DNA of 64,000 bases, taken from contig NC_043009.1 of the NCBI RefSeq assembly GCF_006345805.1, positions 21,824,001-21,888,000 on the forward strand. The letters are read 5' to 3'. The translations under genes and the position numbers were made by a program. The notes beneath the pieces are model-generated. The model searched no databases, was not told the origin of the DNA, and was given only the letters and a program-made list of their open reading frames with translations. This stretch comes from Octopus sinensis. Lineage: Eukaryota. This document shows positions 2,780 to 48,557 of this stretch, in pieces; within the stretch, counting starts at the first letter, position 1; every line of letters begins with the position of its first letter.

Positions 2780-3489
2780 GTATCCTTCTATTCATTTGCC
2801 AGCATCTTGTATGTTTTTCTGTTTTTTCTTTCTTTTCATTTCTTTCTCAACTCTTCTGCCAGCAAGCAGGCTAGTTAAACTATTAGTTAAATCTGAGCTA
2901 CTTTAATCAATGTAGTGGGCCAAAAAGTTTTTTAATCAGTTAAAGTTACACCCATAACAAAAGAGAAGTTAGTGTTAGTAACAATTTTTGTCAAGAGGGA
3001 CAAAAGGAGAGAATTCTGAAATTTAAACTGATTAAAAATTAAATGGATTTAAGCAGTTAACTTTAGGTTGTGTCTAATATTCAGAACTATCTGATGATGT
3101 CTAAACTTTTCTTTTTATTATTGTCTGATATAAGGCAACAAGCTGGCAGAATCATTAGCACTCCTGGTGAAATGCTTAGTTGTATTTCGTCAGCCAGTAT
3201 GTTCTGTGTTCAAATTCTGCTGAGGTCGACTTTTCCTTTCATCCTTTTGGGGTTGATGAAATAAGTACCAGTTATGCACTAGGGTTGATATAATCGATGA
3301 GCCTACTTCCCCCAAAATTTTCAAAGGCCTTGTGCCTAGATTAGAAATGATTACTGTTTAATATAGTTTTGTTTAGATCATTTTATCAGTGTGAGTTTAA
3401 AGATTGAGGGCAACTGACAACTGAAACAAAGAGCCGTGTGTTTTATATTGCAATGAGCTCAATCACTGGTTTACATCATTTATGATGTA

Positions 3490-4015
3490 AACCAGGCAGG
3501 ACAAGTGAGCCCAGCCCACTTATGCATGCCTTTCCTCCCTTGGACACAAAGACCTGTTGAGGCAAGCGAAGTCGATATCGAACCTCATCCGACGACAGGC
3601 ACCCATGCCAACCCCCTTTGCTTGCGAAGACATGTTGGGGCAAGTGAAATCGAAATAATCCTATGACTGGCACCCGGCAGATGCCAGGACCCCTGGACTG
3701 GTGGTACATAAAAAGCACTATCCAAATCGTGGCCGATGCCAGCGCCGCCTCGACTGGCTTCTGTGCCGGTGGCACGTAAATTGCACCAATCCAACCGTGG
3801 CTGTTGCCAGCCTTGCCTGGCACCTGTGCGGGTGGCACGTAAAAAGCACCCACTACACTCACGGAGTGGTTGGCGTTAGGTAGGGCATCCAGCTGTAGAA
3901 ACATTGCCAGATAAGACTGGAGCCTGGTGCAGCCTTCTGGCTTCCTAGATCCCTGGTCGAACCGTCCAACCCATGCTAGCATGGAGAACGGACGTTAAAC
4001 GATGATGATGATGAT
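3490..4015 (+). mobile_element. RTE-like LINE 3' end (from the ORF2 stop to the tail)
   Basis: Starts caggcaggacaagtgag, the same ORF2 end as 60041-60060 on -. Ends gacgttaaacgatgatgatgatgat. Further 3'-end copies at about 735-1054(+), 5190-5370(-), 6853-7140(-), 9960-10410(+), 15520-15710(-), 23640-23935(-), 37310-37490(-), 38775-39060(-), 58890-59196(-) and 63590-63860(-). Confidence 0.85.
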
Positions 4016-6339
4016 AACCAAACTGACAAGGGAGTGTGTATAACTCAGTTCCGAACAAATATTTTTAAAAAAAGTAGTAGAATTTCTTTTGCTTTTCTTG
4101 TTCAAAATTTACCTCCTTCATTGAAAGATGGGCTTCCTTGTAATTTCCATGTGCCAAGTTCTACTCACAATATATTGGTCAACTCGAAGCTACAGTAGAA
4201 GATAATTACCAAAAGGCATCATGCAGTGAGATTGAACCCAGAACTACTTAGTTGAGAACTGAATATCTTAGCCACTTAGCTATGCCTATTTTGTGACATT
4301 TTTTTGTATGCTTTGTTCAGATGTCTGAAATGTTTCACATTTGCAAAGGTCAGTGTTAATGAAATTCATAAGGTTCTTGACATCCACAAATTATATTATT
4401 ACTTTTAATCGCTTTCAGCTGCTTGACTTTATTGTGGTTGTTATTGTTGTTGCTGCAGCTAGCTGCTATTGATTAAATTGTTTATACAAACATTTGATTA
4501 TTATTAGTATTAAGGCAGTGAGCTGGCAGAATTGTTAGCACACTGGACAAAATGCTTAGCAGTATTTTGCCCCTTTGCTACGTTCTGAGTTCAAATTCTG
4601 CCAAGATCAACTTTACCTTTCATCCTTTCTTGGTCAATAAATTAAGTACCAGTTGAGTAATAGGGTCAGTGTAATTGACTATTACCCTCCCCCAAATTTC
4701 AGACCTTGTGACTATAATAGAAAAGATTATTATTATTTAGGCAATGAACTAGCAGAACCATTAGCATGCCAGGCAAAATGCATAATGGCATTTTGTCCAT
4801 CTTCGCATTCTGAATTCAAATTCCGCCAAGGTTGACTGCTTTTCATCCTTTCAGGGTTGATAAAATAAGTACCAGTTGAGTACTGGAGGTTGATGTAATC
4901 GATTTATTCCCTCCTTGAAATTGTTGGCCTTGTGCCAGAATTTGAAACCATTATTATTATTATTGCATCATCAATCTAGTCCGATTATTTTATCTGTACA
5001 TGTAATTGCTTCTAGTCCCTCACAGAGAGTCTACACTAACTTTGAAAAATCCTCCTACTGTCATTACACGATCATGATAACTCTATAAATAACACTCTAA
5101 CATTTAACTTTTTACTAGATATGTTTCTTGTTTAGGCCTCATCTTCTCTGTTGGATTCATTTTCATCATCTAACATTCATTTTCATCATCTAACATTCAT
5201 TTTCTATGCAGGCCTGGGTTGGATGATTGGCAAGAGCTGGCAAGCCAGAGATCTGCACCAGGTTCCAGCTGTCTGTTTCAGCAATGTTTCTACCGCTGGA
5301 TGCCCTTCTTTATGCCAACCACTTTACAGACTGTACTTGGGTGCTTTTATTGTGGCACCAGCACAAAATTCATCTCAAACTCTCCTTCTCTGCTCTGCAG
5401 TTGTCTAACACAAAATTTTTTTCACTCCTTCAACCATAACAGGGTTTTTGGTCCTGATGAGGTTCTTTTCATTATCCTCAAGCCAGGGTATGAGATCTCT
5501 TGCCACAGCTATTTTGGTACCACTTATTGGGCATTGCTGATTCAACACTAACTTGACATCAGACATTTTAATGTTTCTCTCTCCCTCCCTCTCTTCCTCT
5601 CTCTCTCTTCCACCCCTCTCTCTCGCCATCCTTATCTTTCTCAGTCACTCTATCTGTATGTTTATATTTCTGTGCATTCATGTGTGTATGTCTGTTTGCC
5701 TACAGTGCCAAAAAGTACTTTCATCAAAACAGGTTGAATGTCCAGTCAGCCATGTCAATCATCAGCATCCTAACAGCTGTACCCAGTTGTCTCATTCTGC
5801 TCAATCCATGCTTCAGAGCCTCCTGCTGCTTATTCTCATTAAATTCATCAATCTTTCCCTCCATTGGGATACAGCCAATCTGTCAAACCACTTTACAGTA
5901 TGATCCATTCTCAAAAAGGGCTCTTTCTCTGACTGACCATTACTGGCTATCTCTATCCCCTCTTCTCTCATTGTTGACAGAAACAGTCTTAAATAAATCA
6001 TTTTGTCCAACTTCTGTCACTCTCTCTCTCTCTCTCTCTCTCCTTTCTCAGATACAGCTAATATGGTTTCTGCAGGACTGGTTTTAGTAGGGACCTTACC
6101 TCCTGAGAATATAGGTGAAAGCAGTGTTGCCCTTCACATGAGTACAACCTTTGATGCTTCTTGGGAACCTCCTGGAATGGTACTGCTACACATACACAAG
6201 CATGTAGTTATACTAAAGGGACAGAGGATGTTGAAATATTAAAATTACAGTGATACCTCACCATACAAGATTAATTTCTTCCATGACCAAGCTCATCTTA
6301 CAATTTATGCGTTTTACAAATCAACTTTCCCCATTGAAA

Positions 6340-7488: not shown

Positions 7489-7655
7489 GACAGGCTTCTT
7501 TCAGTTTCCATTTACCAAATCCACTCACAAGGCTTCGGTCGACCTGAGGCTATAGTAGAAGACAGTTGCCCTAGGTGCTACGCAGTGGGAATGAACTTGG
7601 AACCATGTGGTTGGTAAGCAAGCTACTTACCATACAACCACTCGTGCGCCTATAC

Positions 7656-7686
<31 letters not shown>

Positions 7687-8163
7687 TATATACATATATA
7701 TATATATACACTCATACACACACATATATACATATATATACACACACACACATGTGTGTGCATGTAGATGTGCATGGCTTAGTGGGTTGCACCAGTGATC
7801 ATAGAATTGTGGTTTTGATTCCTGGAGCAGGCAATGTTCTTGAGCAAAACACTTCATTTCACATTACTCCCATCCACTCAGCTGGCAAAAGTGAATATTT
7901 CTGTGGTAGACTGGCATCCTGTCCAGGGAAGAATATGTATAGGCCACAGAATCCAGTAAACTAACCTTACAAGCCATAGCTTAAAAAAGGTTTTTATCCT
8001 TTAGATACAGGTGTGTGTGTATAAACATTGAACAATGAGAATGTGCGTTCACCATCACATGGATGTATAAAATTTCTTTGTGTATTGAGACTACTATTGG
8101 TTTCATGTTAAAATATCTTAATATCTTTCTCTCTATATATATGTGTGTGTGTGTATATATATG

Positions 8164-8220
<57 letters not shown>

Positions 8221-38195: not shown

Positions 38196-38243
38196 GTCTT
38201 ACAGCTGTTTCTAGGATATTTATTATATCCCTTCATCGGAGAC
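38196..38243 (-). ncRNA. Minimal type I hammerhead ribozyme motif (Penelope/retrozyme style), with variant core
   Basis: Reverse complement gtct-CCGATGA-agggatat-aataa-atatccta-GAAA-cagctg-TA-agac. Stem I GTCT/AGAC, 7-bp stem II, palindromic stem III CAGCTG, cleavage triplet GUA. Core U4 is C. Confidence 0.7.
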
Positions 38244-38253
38244 GGTGTGTGTG

Positions 38254-38294
<41 letters not shown>

Positions 38295-39700
38295 ACCAGT
38301 GTCTTTGAAAGGCTTATTTCTACAAACAAAATAATCCCATTTGATGCATTTAAATCCTTAATCTAGTATTCAGTAGACATGCTTTGTGCAGCTTTTAATG
38401 ATTTACCACCTGTTTGGGCATCATACAAATGAGTCGTGTCTGCACAGATAAAGCAGTATAATGAGGGGTGTCTATTTACTTTTCAGTTGTCTGTGAATGT
38501 ATATATAGGTTCAAAATTCACAACAGCTGTTTCTGCATGGTTGTTGATGAACTAGTCACCTATTTCTACCCGACCTGTTTATCTGCTTAAAATTTACCTG
38601 ATGATGGCATGTTTTTGCCATGATGTAATTTAAGAATGCATCAATAAAATGCTACTGAAACAGATGAGAATTTTTAACCCCACTTGTGTTCTTTTACACA
38701 TACACTACATTTGGAATTATCCCTAGGTGAGATATACAGCTTATATTGGATTGGGTACTTATGTGTATACCTATGTCATCATCATCATCTAACGTCCACT
38801 TTACGTACTGGCATGGGTTAGACAGTTTGACTGGAGATGATAATGGCTGCACCAGGTTCCAATCTGATTTGGCATGGTCTCTACACCTGGATGCCCTTCC
38901 TAATGCCAATCTCTCCAAGAGTATAATGAGTGCTTTTATGTGCCAATTACATGACAACGGCATCGGCCACGACTACAATTTCACTTGACATGACGAGTCT
39001 TCTCAAGCACAACGTATTACCAAAAGTCTCAGTCACTTGTCGTTGCCTCTGTGAGGCCCAGATAAATGTGTGTATTTATATAGGCAGTTTAATACTTACA
39101 GTTTAATACCAATGAATGACAACTATAAGGAGTTGTGCTTCAATGTACTTTTGACTCAATTCTAAGTATTTAACCAATCCTGGTGTTCCACATGATATAT
39201 CTAGATTCTAATGAATCCTGCAAATGATCTATATGTGTATATATATATATATATATGCACAGGAGTGGCTGTGTGGTAAGTAGCTTGCTTACCAACCACA
39301 TGGTTCCAGGTTCATTCCCACTGCGTGGCACCTTGGGCAAGTGTCTTCTACTATAGCCTCGGGCCGACCAAAGCCTTGTGAGTGGATTTGGTAGACGGAA
39401 ATTGAAAGAAGCCCATTGTAACTTAGCCGTTCGGCAAAAGAGACCAATAGAATAAGTACTAGGATGACAAAGAATAAGTTCTGGGGTCGATTTGCTCGAC
39501 TAAAGGTGGTGCTCCAGCATGGCCACAGTCAAATGACTGAAACAAGTAAAAGAATAAAAAAGAAAAAGATATATAAAATCTCTGCTCATGGAAAGCCATT
39601 AACGTTACAAGAAATGGTTCCAACTGAGAATCAAAATCAGAGCACTGGATTAACTTGCAACCAAATCCACAGAATTAATCACCTTAACAAAGGTCTAGAG

Positions 39701-45616: not shown

Positions 45617-47161
45617 CTGAAGAAAGATGGAAGAGTCAATGAAAAACAAGAGGAAAGTCAGGCTTAACAAACTTCATTTTATTGAGTCACATAAACAAGG
45701 ATTATCTTCGTATTTTTTTTATTTATTCATCTATATTTACTCAGTGCAGGCATGGCTTCCCAACCATGTGGTTTTGGGTTCAGTCCCAAGTCCCACTGTG
45801 TGGCACCTTGAAAATGTATCTTCTATTGTAGCCTCCGATTAACTGAAGCCCTGTGAGTGGATTTGGTAGATAGAAACTGAAAGAAGCCCATCGTATGTGT
45901 TTTTTGTGTGGATATGTGTGTGTCCCCCTTTGTGAAAGCACACGGCTTAGTGGTTAGGGTATTTAACTCACAATTGTAAAGTGATGGGTTCGATTCTTAA
46001 CAGCACGTTGTGTCTTTCAGCAAGATACTTTATTTCACATTGCTCCAGTCCCCTCAGCTGGCAAAAATGAGTTGCACATGTCATTCAAAGGGCCAGCCTC
46101 GTCACACTTTGTATCACATTGTATCTCCCTATGAACTACATTAAGGGTATGTGTGTCTGTGGAGCACTCAGCCACTTGCACATTAATTTCATGAGCAGGC
46201 TGTTCTGTTGGTCAGATTAACTGGAAGACTCATCATAGCTGATAGAATGCCAGTTTCTTATTTTTTTACTGCCCACAATGGGGCTACACACAGAGGGGAC
46301 AGACAAACAGATTAAGTCGATTATATCGACCCCAGTGCACAACTGGTACTTATTTAATCGACCCCGAAAGGATGAAAGGCAAAGTCGACCTCAGCGGAGT
46401 TTGAACTCAGAACGTGACGGCAGACGAAATACCTATTTCTTTACTACCCACAAGGGGCTAAACACAGAGGGGACAAACAAGGACAGACAAACGGATTAAG
46501 TCGATTACATCAACCCCAGTGTGTAACTGGCAAAGCCGACCTCAGCAGAATTTGAACTCAGAACGTAACATCGGACAAAATACCGTGAAGCATTTAGCCC
46601 GACGTGCTAACGATTCTGCCAGCTCACCGATAGAATGCCAGTTTCTGTCTCCTTGTCTGACTTCATGTGATGGTTGTATATGAGTATCACTGTCATACAA
46701 GCAGTGTCTTTCATTTCAAGTTTTTCCTTGAAAATATGTTAGACTATGGAGAAATATTACCTTACTTGAAAACACGTGAGGGTTGGTGATAGGAATGGCA
46801 TCCAGCCATAGAAAATCTGTCTCAGTGAATTCCATGTGACCCACGCAAGCATAGAAAAGTAGATGTTAAACCAGTGACGATGATGATAACAACAGCAATG
46901 CCCCTGATGGAATAAATGAAGGGAAGAGTGTGTGCATGCATTTTTGTGTTTGTTCATTAATTCAGGGTCACAAAATATTTCTGTATTGAATGAAAATACC
47001 TCATGGTATACCTATCTGTGTTGACTGCCTCTCTTTGGCATGAGTGGTGTGGCTTTTGTCCTTCACTGACAGAGGTCATTGAGAAAATAAGTACATCATC
47101 ATCATCATTTAACATCCGTTTTCCATGCTAGCATGGGTTGGATGGGAAAATATATTATTTG

Positions 47162-47234
47162 CGACCACAATGAGACTCGAACTCGCAATCTTCTGATTTG
47201 AAGTCAGACACCTTATCCATTAGGCCATGCGGCC
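47162..47234 (-). tRNA. tRNA-Arg(TCG)-like gene carrying a TCA anticodon, probably a pseudogene or retrocopy
   Basis: Reverse complement GGCCGCA TG GCCT AATGGATA AGGT G TCTGA CTTCAAA TCAGA AGATT GCGAG TTCGAGT CTCAT TGTGGTC G gives a 73-nt cloverleaf with intact A and B boxes. It closely resembles animal tRNA-Arg-TCG (GGCCGCGTGGCCTAATGGATAAGGCGTCTGACTTCGGATCAGAAG...). There is one C-A mismatch in the T stem and a TTTT run 11 nt downstream. Confidence 0.85.
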
Positions 47235-47344: not shown

Positions 47345-47489
47345 CTTAGCTCGACTGTAAAACAGCTTTCCTTTATTGGGGCCATTTCCCAGAATTCCAA
47401 GGCCTCGACTTGCAAACCATATGGCACATCCAATGCTGTCATCTAATACAGAGCACAATGGATAGAGCAAATGGGACACACGTTTCTGC
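47345..47489 (-). CDS. ASNSD1: ASNSD1 exon
   Basis: 145 bp. QKRVSHLLYPLCSVLDDSIGCAIWFASRGLGILGNGPNKGKLFYSRAK, with the conserved VLDDSIGCAxWFASRG. Confidence 0.96.
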
Positions 47490-48498
47490 CTGAAAATAAT
47501 ATTTCATACACATGAAGAAGATTTATAAACTTTGTAAAGTGGTTGGCATTAGGAAGGGAACCCAGCTGTAAAATCCATGCCAAAACAGACAGTGGAGCTT
47601 CGTGCAGTCCTCTGGTTTGCCAGCTCCTATCAAACCATCCAACCCATGCTAGCATGGAAGATGAACATTAATGATGATGATGATGATGATGATGTGTGAA
47701 GTAAAAAAGCTATGGATCGAGTTGTTGACACTAACCCGTCTGAGACTGTCTCTGGTCTTTTGGACATAGAATTTACCTGTTCTAAAGTGTGCATTGCTTT
47801 GTGGATGGATTTTGTAGATATCTAATTCAAAGCTTTTCATAACTTTATGTAAGAACCTGTTGCTAAGTTATATTCTAAACAGCAGTTTCACAAAGAAATA
47901 AAAGTAAAAATGAATTTCTAAAAATACTCCAAATTTTTTATTAATTTTCAAATTGAAGCAAATTCAAAGTCTTACAGAGCCAGTCATCACCTGAAATAAA
48001 TATGACTTGGTGACATGTACCATGCTTTCACTAATTGTTTTAGGTGCCTGTGCAGTCACAAGCAGACATAGAGAGTCTCTTGACTCTCCCATCCTTTTTG
48101 ACCCAGCTGCACATTGAAGGTGTGACAGCTGGTGGGAAAGAAAAGTTGTACCAGCACTCAGCTGGTACTCAGTTCAACTGAGTAGATTGGAGCAATGTGA
48201 AATGAAGTGTCTTGCTCAAGAACACAATGCCACAATTCAATCTAGAAATTGAACTCACAACAGTGTGCATGTATATTTTCAAGCATGTAGGAATGTATAT
48301 ATGTATGTGTTCATTCATTCCTTAAACATCCATTTTTCCATGCTAACATGGGTTTGAATGTTAAGTTATTTGAAGCAGGATTTTACAGCCAAAATCTCTT
48401 CCTGTCATCATGTATGACATACATACATGATGACAGGAAGAGATTGTGTACATGTATGTATGTATGTATGTATGTATGTGTGTGTGTGTGTGTATGTG

Positions 48499-48557
<59 letters not shown>

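What the first reader, a model, noticed from the sequence alone, without database searches (positions are those of the whole stretch)
47090..47234. tRNA-Arg-like gene with a UGA-reading TCA anticodon, fused through its T4 trailer to a LINE 3' tail
Seen: on the minus strand a complete 73-nt tRNA-Arg(TCG)-like cloverleaf has the loop CT-TCA-AA. It is followed by CAAATAATATA-TTTT and then immediately by the last ~50 nt of the local RTE-like LINE (ccatccaacccatgctagcatggaaaacggatgttaaa) and its (TGA)n tail. It lies in an ASNSD1 intron, sense to that gene. Established: U6-L1 chimeras arise when LINE machinery joins a Pol III transcript ending in oligo-U to a LINE 3' end, and SINEs are typically a tRNA head plus a LINE tail. 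tRNA-Arg-derived SINEs (OR1/OR2) are described in octopus. Inference: this is either a pre-tRNA/LINE retro-chimera (a proto-SINE) or a tRNA locus hit by a very short LINE insertion. Most differences from Arg-TCG are CpG-type transitions, including TCG>TCA, which favours decay. However, the A box, B box and terminator are intact, so an opal-suppressor-like transcript cannot be excluded from sequence alone.
Basis: partly seen in the sequence, partly recalled or inferred. Interest (0 to 1): 0.72.

Follow-up and report, generated by a model that had tools for sequence, protein, structure and literature searches.

The report
Decayed arginine tRNA beside SINE fragment
An arginine tRNA gene inside an intron has lost five of its eight CpG sites to ordinary mutation, one of which changed its anticodon to a stop-codon-reading one, and a short piece of a common mobile element later landed just behind it, so this is ordinary genome decay and not a newly born mobile element.

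Summary
A 73-nt tRNA lies on the minus strand at 47234..47162 with anticodon TCA (Rfam 58.5 bits). It is followed by a 15-nt trailer ending in TTTT, then a 52-nt repeat tail ending in (TGA)4.

The tRNA is a tRNA-Arg(TCG) derivative. All 143 close relatives found in metagenomes carry TCG. The nearest differs at exactly five positions, all CpG transitions, and one of them makes TCG into TCA. A37 is ancestral. One change leaves a C·A mismatch in the T stem.

The tail is the 3' end of an abundant SINE-like repeat with 24 other copies in the window. No coding LINE is present. This copy is 5'-truncated.

A 7-bp target-site duplication, TATTTTC, flanks the tail alone (empirical P about 0.005). Nothing flanks tRNA plus tail together. 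That supports an independent insertion into the tRNA's terminator and contradicts a pre-tRNA/LINE chimera or proto-SINE.

The locus is an intron of a GATase_7 + Asn_synthase gene, consistent with ASNSD1, in strongly CpG-depleted DNA (o/e 0.37). Two distant relatives lack the tRNA in the same intron.

Suppressor activity is unlikely but cannot be excluded from sequence. Interest is low.

The parts
47162..47234 (-). 73-nt tRNA gene, a tRNA-Arg(TCG) derivative with anticodon TCA. It lies in the host intron, sense to the host gene.
   Evidence: ARAGORN. Rfam RF00005 at 58.5 bits against a gathering score of 29. It is 68/73 identical to a natural tRNA-Arg(TCG) such as L014:1989+.
47199..47201 (-). 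Anticodon TCA (positions 34-36). A36 at 47199 corresponds to G36 in every relative and is a CpG transition.
47169..47171 (-). A64 (47171) and T66 (47169), two of the five CpG transitions. G64A creates the C50·A64 mismatch in the T stem. C66T together with G7A (47228) keeps pair 7:66 as A-U. The fifth change is C25T (47210), which gives G10·U25.
   Evidence: classification of the differences; Rfam marks the non-standard pair; G64A alone costs about 5.4 kcal/mol of cloverleaf stability.
47147..47161 (-). 3' trailer CAAATAATATATTTT. The T4 at 47150..47147 is the presumed Pol III terminator.
   Evidence: Read directly from the sequence. Natural relatives have T runs 3-12 nt after the tRNA. The terminator function is inferred.
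47146..47152 (-). 5' copy of the target-site duplication, TATTTTC.
   Evidence: 7-bp exact repeat, empirical null P(k>=7) = 0.0053. The final C is unique among 25 family copies at that column (A 20, T 3, G 1).
47094..47145 (-). 5'-truncated copy (52 nt) of the 3' module of the SINE-like family, including (TGA)4TG.
   Evidence: 24 other copies in the window at 79-94% identity. The other copies have at least 125-260 nt of conserved body upstream that is absent here. It differs from the family consensus only at 3 of 4 CpGs.
47090..47093 (-). Four bases, TACT, between the microsatellite tail and the 3' copy of the duplication.
   Evidence: A comparable 4-nt AACC lies between (GAT)n and a candidate 9-bp duplication in copy p3961+ (suggestive only).
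47083..47089 (-). 3' copy of the target-site duplication, TATTTTC.
47345..47489 (-). Upstream exon of the host gene (GATase_7 + Asn_synthase, ASNSD1-like). It ends AAG|gt, 110 nt before the tRNA.
   Evidence: The same exon and splice donor are present in L121 and L127.

Best explanation
Two unrelated, ordinary events lie side by side.

(1) A tRNA-Arg(TCG) gene copy sits in an intron of an ASNSD1-like gene. It has lost five of its eight CpG dinucleotides to C>T / G>A transitions and has no other change. One of these transitions (G36A) turned the anticodon TCG into TCA. Another (G64A) left a C·A mismatch in the T stem. This is the pattern expected for unconstrained DNA that is methylated in the germline, so the gene is most likely decaying or already a pseudogene.

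(2) A retroposon copy was then inserted by target-primed reverse transcription into the T-rich terminator region just behind the tRNA. Only its last 52 nt were copied (5' truncation), and the insertion duplicated 7 bp of target, TATTTTC. Before the insertion the site read ...GGTCG-CAAATAATATATTTTC-TCAATGACC...

Shown: the tRNA's identity, the five CpG changes, the truncation, the duplication around the tail only, and the CpG depletion of the locus.

Inferred: germline methylation as the cause, target-primed reverse transcription as the mechanism, and loss of function.
For: Identity of the tRNA:
- All 143 relatives have TCG.
- The nearest differs only by G7A, C25T, G36A, G64A and C66T, each a CpG transition. 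That is 5 of 8 CpGs lost and 0 of 57 other positions changed.
- A37 is already present in that relative and in 50 of the 143.

Decay context:
- Window CpG o/e is 0.37 and TpG+CpA o/e is 1.31, rising to 1.48 around the locus. Neutral SINE copies in the same window have lost 25-100% of their CpGs.
- The attached tail has lost 3 of 4 CpGs with no other change.
- In Octopus bimaculoides, methylated CpGs cluster on the bodies of constitutively expressed genes (PMC9476566).

Structure:
- The cloverleaf is -15.8 kcal/mol here against -24.1 for the TCG relative, and 4.6 kcal/mol above this sequence's own minimum free energy. Most of the loss comes from G64A.

Insertion:
- The tail matches 24 other copies that all carry a conserved body upstream; this copy does not.
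- The 7-bp duplication flanks the tail only, with an empirical null of 0.0053.
- The C at 47146 matches the 3' copy of the duplication and not the family consensus.

The tRNA is not an old resident of the intron:
- The orthologous intron is 398 nt with no tRNA in L127.
- There is no tRNA in the first 450 nt of the intron in L121.
Against: - A 7-bp AT-rich duplication offset by 4 nt from the microsatellite is short. P of about 0.005 is good but not overwhelming.
- Target-site duplications could not be demonstrated convincingly for other family copies in the window, so the family's usual duplication length is unknown.
- The junction falls exactly at the end of the T run, which is also what a chimera with a Pol III transcript would predict.
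- Zero non-CpG changes in the tRNA could reflect residual constraint instead of youth. My estimate from the in-window SINE calibration is about 1-2 expected changes, so zero is not informative either way.
- The A box, B box (including C61) and T4 are identical to those of functional-looking relatives, so transcription is not excluded.
- The TCG 'ancestor' is a metagenomic relative, not a tRNA gene from this genome.
- No orthologous site from a close relative could be obtained.
Confidence: 0.75

Rival explanations
1. Pre-tRNA/retroposon chimera (proto-SINE). During target-primed reverse transcription of a LINE or SINE RNA, the reverse transcriptase copied 52 nt of the 3' end. It then switched to the oligo-U 3' end of an unprocessed pre-tRNA-Arg transcript, and the joint cDNA was inserted into the intron as one unit.
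For: - The tRNA is 5' of the tail and sense to it. The junction lies at the end of the T4 run. This is the arrangement known for U6/LINE-1 chimeras (bioRxiv 10.1101/2025.02.02.635956).
- The tRNA is absent from the orthologous intron of two distant relatives, so it arrived in this lineage by some route.
- The tRNA and the tail show similar CpG loss, 5/8 and 3/4, which is compatible with equal age.
Against: - The defining criterion, a duplication flanking both components together, fails. No repeat of 5 bp or more was found with the 5' end free from -30 to +3 and the 3' offset from 0 to 12. Under that geometry 39% of random placements give one.
- A 7-bp duplication flanks the tail alone instead, and this model cannot produce that.
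- The C after T4 matches the target copy. It does not fit a U-ended transcript or the repeat consensus.
- There is no sign of a 5' leader boundary.
- Known human tRNA/LINE-1 chimeras are mostly half-tRNAs in antisense orientation.
Confidence: 0.07
2. Live opal suppressor. Whatever its origin, the gene is still transcribed by Pol III and processed. The product is charged with arginine and reads UGA at a low level.
For: - G36A alone converts 5 of the 6 human tRNA-Arg(UCG) genes into active, high-fidelity UGA suppressors. The one silent case is explained by a B-box C61T change (PMC12361112).
- Here the A box, the B box (C61 kept) and T4 are unchanged relative to natural relatives.
- Pair 7:66 stays paired as A-U and 10:25 as G·U.
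- The loop has A36-A37-A38.
Against: - The anticodon change is one of five CpG transitions. This is the same kind and extent of loss seen in neutral repeats of the same window, so no selection needs to be invoked.
- The C50·A64 mismatch next to a G·U leaves three contiguous T-stem pairs and puts the cloverleaf 4.6 kcal/mol above the minimum free energy.
- A fixed genome-wide UGA suppressor would be expected to be deleterious (general knowledge).
- There are no expression data.
Confidence: 0.08
3. Member of a tRNA-Arg-derived SINE family (head plus LINE-like tail), such as the octopus tRNA-derived retroposons, here in a short form.
For: - Head, short linker, LINE-like tail and simple-repeat tail resemble SINE modular structure (PMC3531059).
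- tRNA-derived SINEs are described in octopus (Ohshima and Okada 1994, cited in PMC4824008).
Against: - The head occurs once in 64 kb while the tail family occurs 25 times.
- No other tRNA-like sequence appears in the window even at E<=10.
- The head is 93% identical to a real tRNA and differs only at CpGs. It has none of the characteristic substitutions that mark a SINE source gene.
- A T4 terminator between head and tail would stop Pol III before the tail.
- No duplication flanks the whole unit.
Confidence: 0.03

Closest known systems
Natural and engineered tRNA-Arg(UCG) G36A variants (tRNA-Arg-UCA), as studied for the six human isodecoders (PMC12361112)
   Same: The same isoacceptor body and the same single change at the CpG of the anticodon (TCG>TCA). 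The paper notes that a natural human G36A allele exists and is silent.
   Different: - This copy carries four further CpG transitions, including a T-stem mismatch.
- The silent human case is explained by a B-box change (C61T) that is not present here.
- Nothing is known about expression of this copy.
5'-truncated non-LTR retroposon insertions made by target-primed reverse transcription
   Same: An intact 3' end with a simple-repeat tail, a missing 5' part, a short duplication of an AT/T-rich target, and many sibling copies nearby.
   Different: - The truncation is extreme, with only 52 nt retained.
- The duplication is short (7 bp), and 4 extra bases separate the tail from it.
- The partner LINE was not identified.
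U6/LINE-1 and tRNA/LINE-1 chimeric insertions (bioRxiv 10.1101/2025.02.02.635956)
   Same: A Pol III RNA gene sequence lies 5' of, and sense to, a retroposon 3' end, with the junction at the oligo-T.
   Different: - Those chimeras are flanked as a unit by 8-20-bp duplications. Here the duplication flanks the tail only.
- Human tRNA/LINE-1 chimeras are mostly half-tRNAs in antisense orientation.
Octopus tRNA-derived SINEs (OR1, a CORE-SINE, and others; Ohshima and Okada 1994, cited in PMC4824008)
   Different: - This is a single copy in the window.
- The head is a near-perfect tRNA gene with its own terminator.
- There is no body or CORE domain.
- I could not read the 1994 paper, so the claim that these SINEs derive from tRNA-Arg is unverified.

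Membership tests
Cytoplasmic tRNA-Arg(TCG) gene | Canonical 73-nt cloverleaf scoring above the tRNA model threshold | tested here: met
   Rfam RF00005 at 58.5 bits against a gathering score of 29, with one non-standard pair. ARAGORN also calls it.
Cytoplasmic tRNA-Arg(TCG) gene | Body sequence of the Arg(TCG) isoacceptor | tested here: met
   68/73 identical to a natural tRNA-Arg(TCG). All 143 tRNAs sharing its D and anticodon arms are TCG.
Cytoplasmic tRNA-Arg(TCG) gene | Anticodon TCG | tested here: not met
   The anticodon is TCA. It is therefore a derivative, not a functional member.
Cytoplasmic tRNA-Arg(TCG) gene | Internal A and B boxes and a downstream T-run terminator | tested here: met
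   Positions 8-19 and 52-62 are identical to the natural relatives. T4 lies 12 nt after the 3' end. Sequence match only; function was not tested.
tRNA-Sec (ARAGORN's label) | About 90 nt with a long variable arm and an extended acceptor stem | tested here: not met
   73 nt, 5-nt variable loop, 7-bp acceptor stem and 5-bp T stem. ARAGORN's label rests on the anticodon alone.
Opal suppressor tRNA-Arg(UCA) | UCA anticodon in an Arg(UCG) body with an intact Pol III promoter | tested here: met
   C61 is retained, unlike the silent human TCG-6-1 (PMC12361112).
Opal suppressor tRNA-Arg(UCA) | Stable cloverleaf | tested here: inconclusive
   C50·A64 mismatch. The cloverleaf is -15.8 against -24.1 kcal/mol for the relative, and 4.6 above this sequence's own minimum free energy. 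In-silico energies do not settle folding of a modified tRNA.
Opal suppressor tRNA-Arg(UCA) | Expression, aminoacylation and UGA read-through | not testable with these tools
   Needs tRNA-seq and a reporter assay.
RNA/LINE template-switch chimera (U6/LINE-1 type) | A target-site duplication flanking both components as one unit | tested here: not met
   No repeat of 5 bp or more under a loose geometry. A 7-bp duplication flanks the tail alone. The criterion comes from bioRxiv 10.1101/2025.02.02.635956.
RNA/LINE template-switch chimera (U6/LINE-1 type) | Small RNA 5' of, and sense to, the retroposon 3' end, joined at the RNA's 3' end | tested here: inconclusive
   Orientation and position fit. 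However, the base after T4 is C. It matches the target copy and does not fit a U-ended transcript.
RNA/LINE template-switch chimera (U6/LINE-1 type) | A parent gene elsewhere with the same trailer | not testable with these tools
   No genome of this organism is searchable here.
SINE (SINEBase definition, PMC3531059) | [quoted passage not shown] | not testable with these tools
   Only the window is available. It holds 1 copy of the head and 25 of the tail.
SINE (SINEBase definition, PMC3531059) | [quoted passage not shown] | tested here: met
   93% over 73 nt. That is also what a plain tRNA gene gives.
SINE (SINEBase definition, PMC3531059) | Pol III transcription from the head through the body and tail | tested here: not met
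   A T4 run lies between head and tail. This is a sequence-level test, and read-through is not excluded experimentally.
5'-truncated retroposon insertion by target-primed reverse transcription | Intact family 3' end with a simple-repeat tail and a missing 5' part | tested here: met
5'-truncated retroposon insertion by target-primed reverse transcription | A target-site duplication directly flanking the inserted piece | tested here: met
   TATTTTC at 47152..47146 and 47089..47083, with an empirical null of 0.0053. Caveats: it is short and offset by 4 nt.

The most novel reading that the evidence does not exclude
The gene is still transcribed and yields a low-level, arginine-inserting UGA suppressor tRNA that is fixed in a cephalopod lineage. 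It would have been produced by CpG deamination inside a methylated gene body and tolerated, or even used, by the animal.
Probability: 0.06. Interest if true: 0.6.

Novelty: new member of a known kind. Interest (0 to 1): 0.15.

Why it matters
As it stands it matters little. It is a clear example of two routine processes. The first is CpG decay of a tRNA gene lying in a probably methylated gene body, which incidentally creates a stop-reading anticodon. The second is a severely truncated retroposon insertion into an oligo-T terminator.

It is a useful warning for annotation in two ways:
- ARAGORN labels the gene tRNA-SeC from the anticodon alone.
- A tRNA next to a retroposon tail can look like a SINE being born.

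If the tRNA proved to be expressed and charged, it would be a naturally fixed animal opal suppressor of the same type now being engineered for therapy, and that would be of real interest.

Tried and rejected
- tRNA-Sec, ARAGORN's label: rejected on architecture.
- A37 as an adaptive change creating the A36-A37-A38 motif: rejected. A37 is ancestral in 50 of 143 relatives and in the nearest one.
- The G7A + C66T pair as evidence of compensatory selection: rejected as uninformative, because both are CpG transitions in a locus losing most of its CpGs.
- Orthologous sites in close relatives:
  - The exon peptide found only two distant relatives.
  - Exact look-ups of two window ORFs were not on record.
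  - The 238-aa exon ORF found a 79%-identical relative, but only on ~1.1-kb contigs that do not reach the tRNA.
  - The junction-spanning 52-aa ORF found nothing.
- Cephalopod DNA among the 123 fetched loci: none carries the SINE module.
- Naming the SINE family by searching papers for its sequence strings: no hits.
- Target-site duplications of other family copies: the automated scan was dominated by chance and low-complexity matches. One candidate 9-bp duplication, for p3961+, is not significant after multiple testing.
- A tRNA-like head for the SINE-like family: Rfam finds none at E<=10.
- A 107-aa ORF overlapping the start of the main ORF in L124-L126, considered as the known ASNSD1 upstream ORF: the sequence is low-complexity and only weakly conserved, so no claim is made.
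- PDB search with the host ORF: no match.
- The bacterial promoter/terminator scan is irrelevant to a Pol III gene.
Full report
**1. What is in the sequence**

On the minus strand, 47234..47162 is a complete 73-nt tRNA. ARAGORN calls it with anticodon tca at position 34. Rfam's tRNA model scores it 58.5 bits against a gathering score of 29 (E = 4.6e-10), with one non-standard pair in the T stem. The anticodon loop is CT-TCA-AA. After the discriminator G come, in order:
- CAAATAATATATTTT (47161..47147);
- a C (47146);
- CCATCCAACCCATGCTAGCATGGAAAACGGATGTTAAA(TGA)4TG (47145..47094);
- TACT, then TATTTTCTCAATG...

**2. What the tRNA is**

I scanned public metagenome contigs with the tRNA's D arm to anticodon arm, leaving the anticodon free. 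This gave 143 full-length tRNAs, and every one has TCG. The loop is CTTCGGA in 93 and CTTCGAA in 50. So this is a tRNA-Arg(TCG) body, and the A at position 37 is a normal variant and not a second change.

The nearest natural sequence (seven copies, for example L014:1989+) differs at exactly five positions: G7A, C25T, G36A, G64A and C66T. Each is a C>T or G>A change at a CpG of the relative. That is five of eight CpGs lost and none of the 57 other positions changed.

The consequences for the structure are as follows:
- Pair 7:66 goes from G-C to A-U.
- Pair 10:25 becomes G·U.
- The anticodon becomes TCA.
- Pair 50:64 becomes a C·A mismatch.

The canonical cloverleaf is the minimum-free-energy fold of the relative at -24.1 kcal/mol. 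For this sequence it is -15.8 kcal/mol, 4.6 above its own minimum, and reverting A64 alone recovers about 5.4 kcal/mol. The A box and B box are identical to those of the relatives, including C61. ARAGORN's label 'tRNA-SeC' comes from the anticodon alone. The molecule has none of the selenocysteine tRNA architecture.

**3. What the tail is**

The 52-nt tail matches 24 other places in the 64-kb window at 79-94% identity, on both strands. The tRNA part matches nowhere else. In the other copies the module is preceded by at least 125-260 nt of conserved sequence, with variable numbers of a ~65-nt internal unit. Some copies reach 450-600 nt. None of that body is present next to the tRNA, so this copy is 5'-truncated to its last 52 nt.

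The family looks like a SINE, but two things remain unverified:
- Rfam detects no tRNA-like head in it even at E<=10.
- The window holds no ORF of 130 aa or more that could be a reverse transcriptase.

'RTE-like LINE' is therefore unverified. A LINE partner sharing this 3' end may well exist elsewhere. SINEs and LINEs each make up about 12% of the Octopus vulgaris genome (PMC13282606).

**4. How the two came together**

This was the central question. A chimera made in one retrotransposition event must be flanked as a whole by one target-site duplication. That is the criterion used for U6/LINE-1 and tRNA/LINE-1 chimeras (bioRxiv 10.1101/2025.02.02.635956).
- No direct repeat of 4 bp or more flanks tRNA plus tail with the 5' boundary free by ±6 nt.
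- None of 5 bp or more appears with the 5' boundary free from -30 to +3 and the 3' offset from 0 to 12. Under that geometry 39% of random placements in this window give one.
- The 7 bp immediately before the tail (TATTTTC, 47152..47146) recur 4 nt after the microsatellite (47089..47083). With the same geometry at random positions in the window, a repeat of 7 bp or more occurs in 0.53% of trials.
- The last base of the 5' copy, C at 47146, is not what the repeat family has at that column (A in 20 copies, T in 3, G in 1). It is also not what a Pol III transcript ending in U would contribute. It is what the 3' copy has.

The simplest reading is that the site once read ...GGTCGCAAATAATATATTTTCTCAATGACC..., and a severely truncated retroposon copy was inserted into the oligo-T region with a 7-bp duplication. 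The T4 run then remains a terminator between the tRNA and the tail, so the pair is not a transcription unit and not a proto-SINE.

Caveats: the duplication is short and AT-rich, 4 extra bases separate it from the tail, and I could not establish the family's usual duplication length from other copies.

**5. Context**

The tRNA lies 110 nt into an intron, sense to the host gene. The upstream exon is 47489..47345 and ends AAG|gt. Ten exon-like segments on the window's minus strand are collinear with a 206-kb contig from a distant relative (L127). Their concatenated translation hits GATase_7 (E = 7.7e-9) and Asn_synthase (E = 2e-19). This fits ASNSD1, although no database name confirmed it.

The intron is about 1.73 kb and mostly repeats. 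The tRNA, its trailer and its immediate flanks are unique in the window. In L127 the orthologous intron is 398 nt and has no tRNA, and neither does the rest of that 20.5-kb locus. In a second distant relative (L121) the first 450 nt of the intron have none. So the tRNA is not an ancient resident of this intron. How it got there is unknown, and I found no duplication around the tRNA itself.

**6. Why CpG decay**

The window has CpG o/e 0.37 and TpG+CpA o/e 1.31, rising to 1.48 around the locus. Eighteen aligned SINE copies, which serve as neutral markers, have lost 25-100% of their consensus CpGs. The tRNA's 5 of 8 and the adjoining tail's 3 of 4 sit in the middle of that range.

In Octopus bimaculoides, methylated CpGs are concentrated on the bodies of constitutively expressed genes (PMC9476566). 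An intron of a housekeeping-type gene is where methylation-driven C>T change is expected. That link is my inference.

From the SINE data, going from 25% to 62% CpG loss adds only about 1-2% non-CpG divergence. By my estimate that predicts one or two non-CpG changes in the tRNA. Finding none is unremarkable and argues neither for nor against constraint.

**7. Could it work as a suppressor?**

Mechanistically yes. G36A alone makes five of the six human tRNA-Arg(UCG) genes efficient, high-fidelity UGA suppressors, and the silent one is explained by a B-box change (PMC12361112) that is not present here.

Three things count against it:
- The change is one of five of the same mutational kind, in DNA that is visibly losing its CpGs.
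- The T stem is damaged.
- A fixed suppressor would be expected to be harmful.

I put about 6-8% on a live suppressor. Only expression data can settle it.

**8. Verdict**

The headline interpretation (retro-chimera or proto-SINE) is not supported.

This is a new instance of known kinds: an anticodon-mutated, decaying tRNA gene and a 5'-truncated retroposon insertion. Interest is low.

The decisive test I could not run is the orthologous intron in closely related species. No genome of this organism or its close relatives was reachable with the tools.

Noticed in passing
window 47109-47145 and 47635-47671: The tail next to the tRNA and another copy of the same SINE 3' module form an inverted repeat of 37 nt, 86% complementary, with 489 nt between the arms. 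The arms enclose the tRNA and the exon at 47489..47345. In the pre-mRNA they could pair across the exon, the sort of arrangement that can favour RNA editing, exon skipping or back-splicing. A weaker inverted copy lies at 46839-46885.
   Followed up: partly
window 48396-48442: A perfect 21-bp palindrome with a 5-nt loop (CTCTTCCTGTCATCATGTATG...CATACATGATGACAGGAAGAG). Rfam picks it up on both strands as weak mir-4716-like hits, 33 bits against a gathering score of 76. Its nature is unknown.
   Followed up: no
window, 25 sites (e.g. 3421-4017, 59630, 992, 58944, 42425): An abundant SINE-like family with a constant 3' module (…ACCGTCCAACCCATGCTAGCATGGAAAACGGACGTTAAACGA(TGA)n), a conserved ~125-nt body and variable numbers of a ~65-nt internal unit. 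Rfam detects no tRNA-like head at E<=10. Copy p3961+ may be about 600 bp, with a candidate 9-bp duplication AACTGACAA at 3412 and 4021.
   Followed up: partly
window 33772-63529, minus strand: Ten exon-like segments of a GATase_7 + Asn_synthase gene are collinear with the distant relative L127. The intron that holds the tRNA is about 1.73 kb here and 398 nt in L127. The difference is almost entirely repeats.
   Followed up: yes
whole window: Strong CpG depletion (o/e 0.37) with TpG+CpA excess (1.31) at 38.5% G+C.
   Followed up: yes
L124 50-373 (also L125, L126); window 56065-55790 minus strand: In a 79%-identical relative, a 107-aa ORF overlaps the start of the main ORF by 4 nt. It aligns at 48% with the region just upstream of the window's long exon. 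It is low-complexity. It could be an upstream ORF or just conserved 5' sequence.
   Followed up: partly
window, many sites (e.g. 7644-7775, 8133-8203, 38230-38312, 48468-48538): (TA)n and (TG/TA)-rich microsatellites produce dozens of sub-threshold miRNA-family hits (mir-297, mir-1277, mir-3149 and others) in the permissive Rfam search. These are low-complexity artefacts.
   Followed up: no
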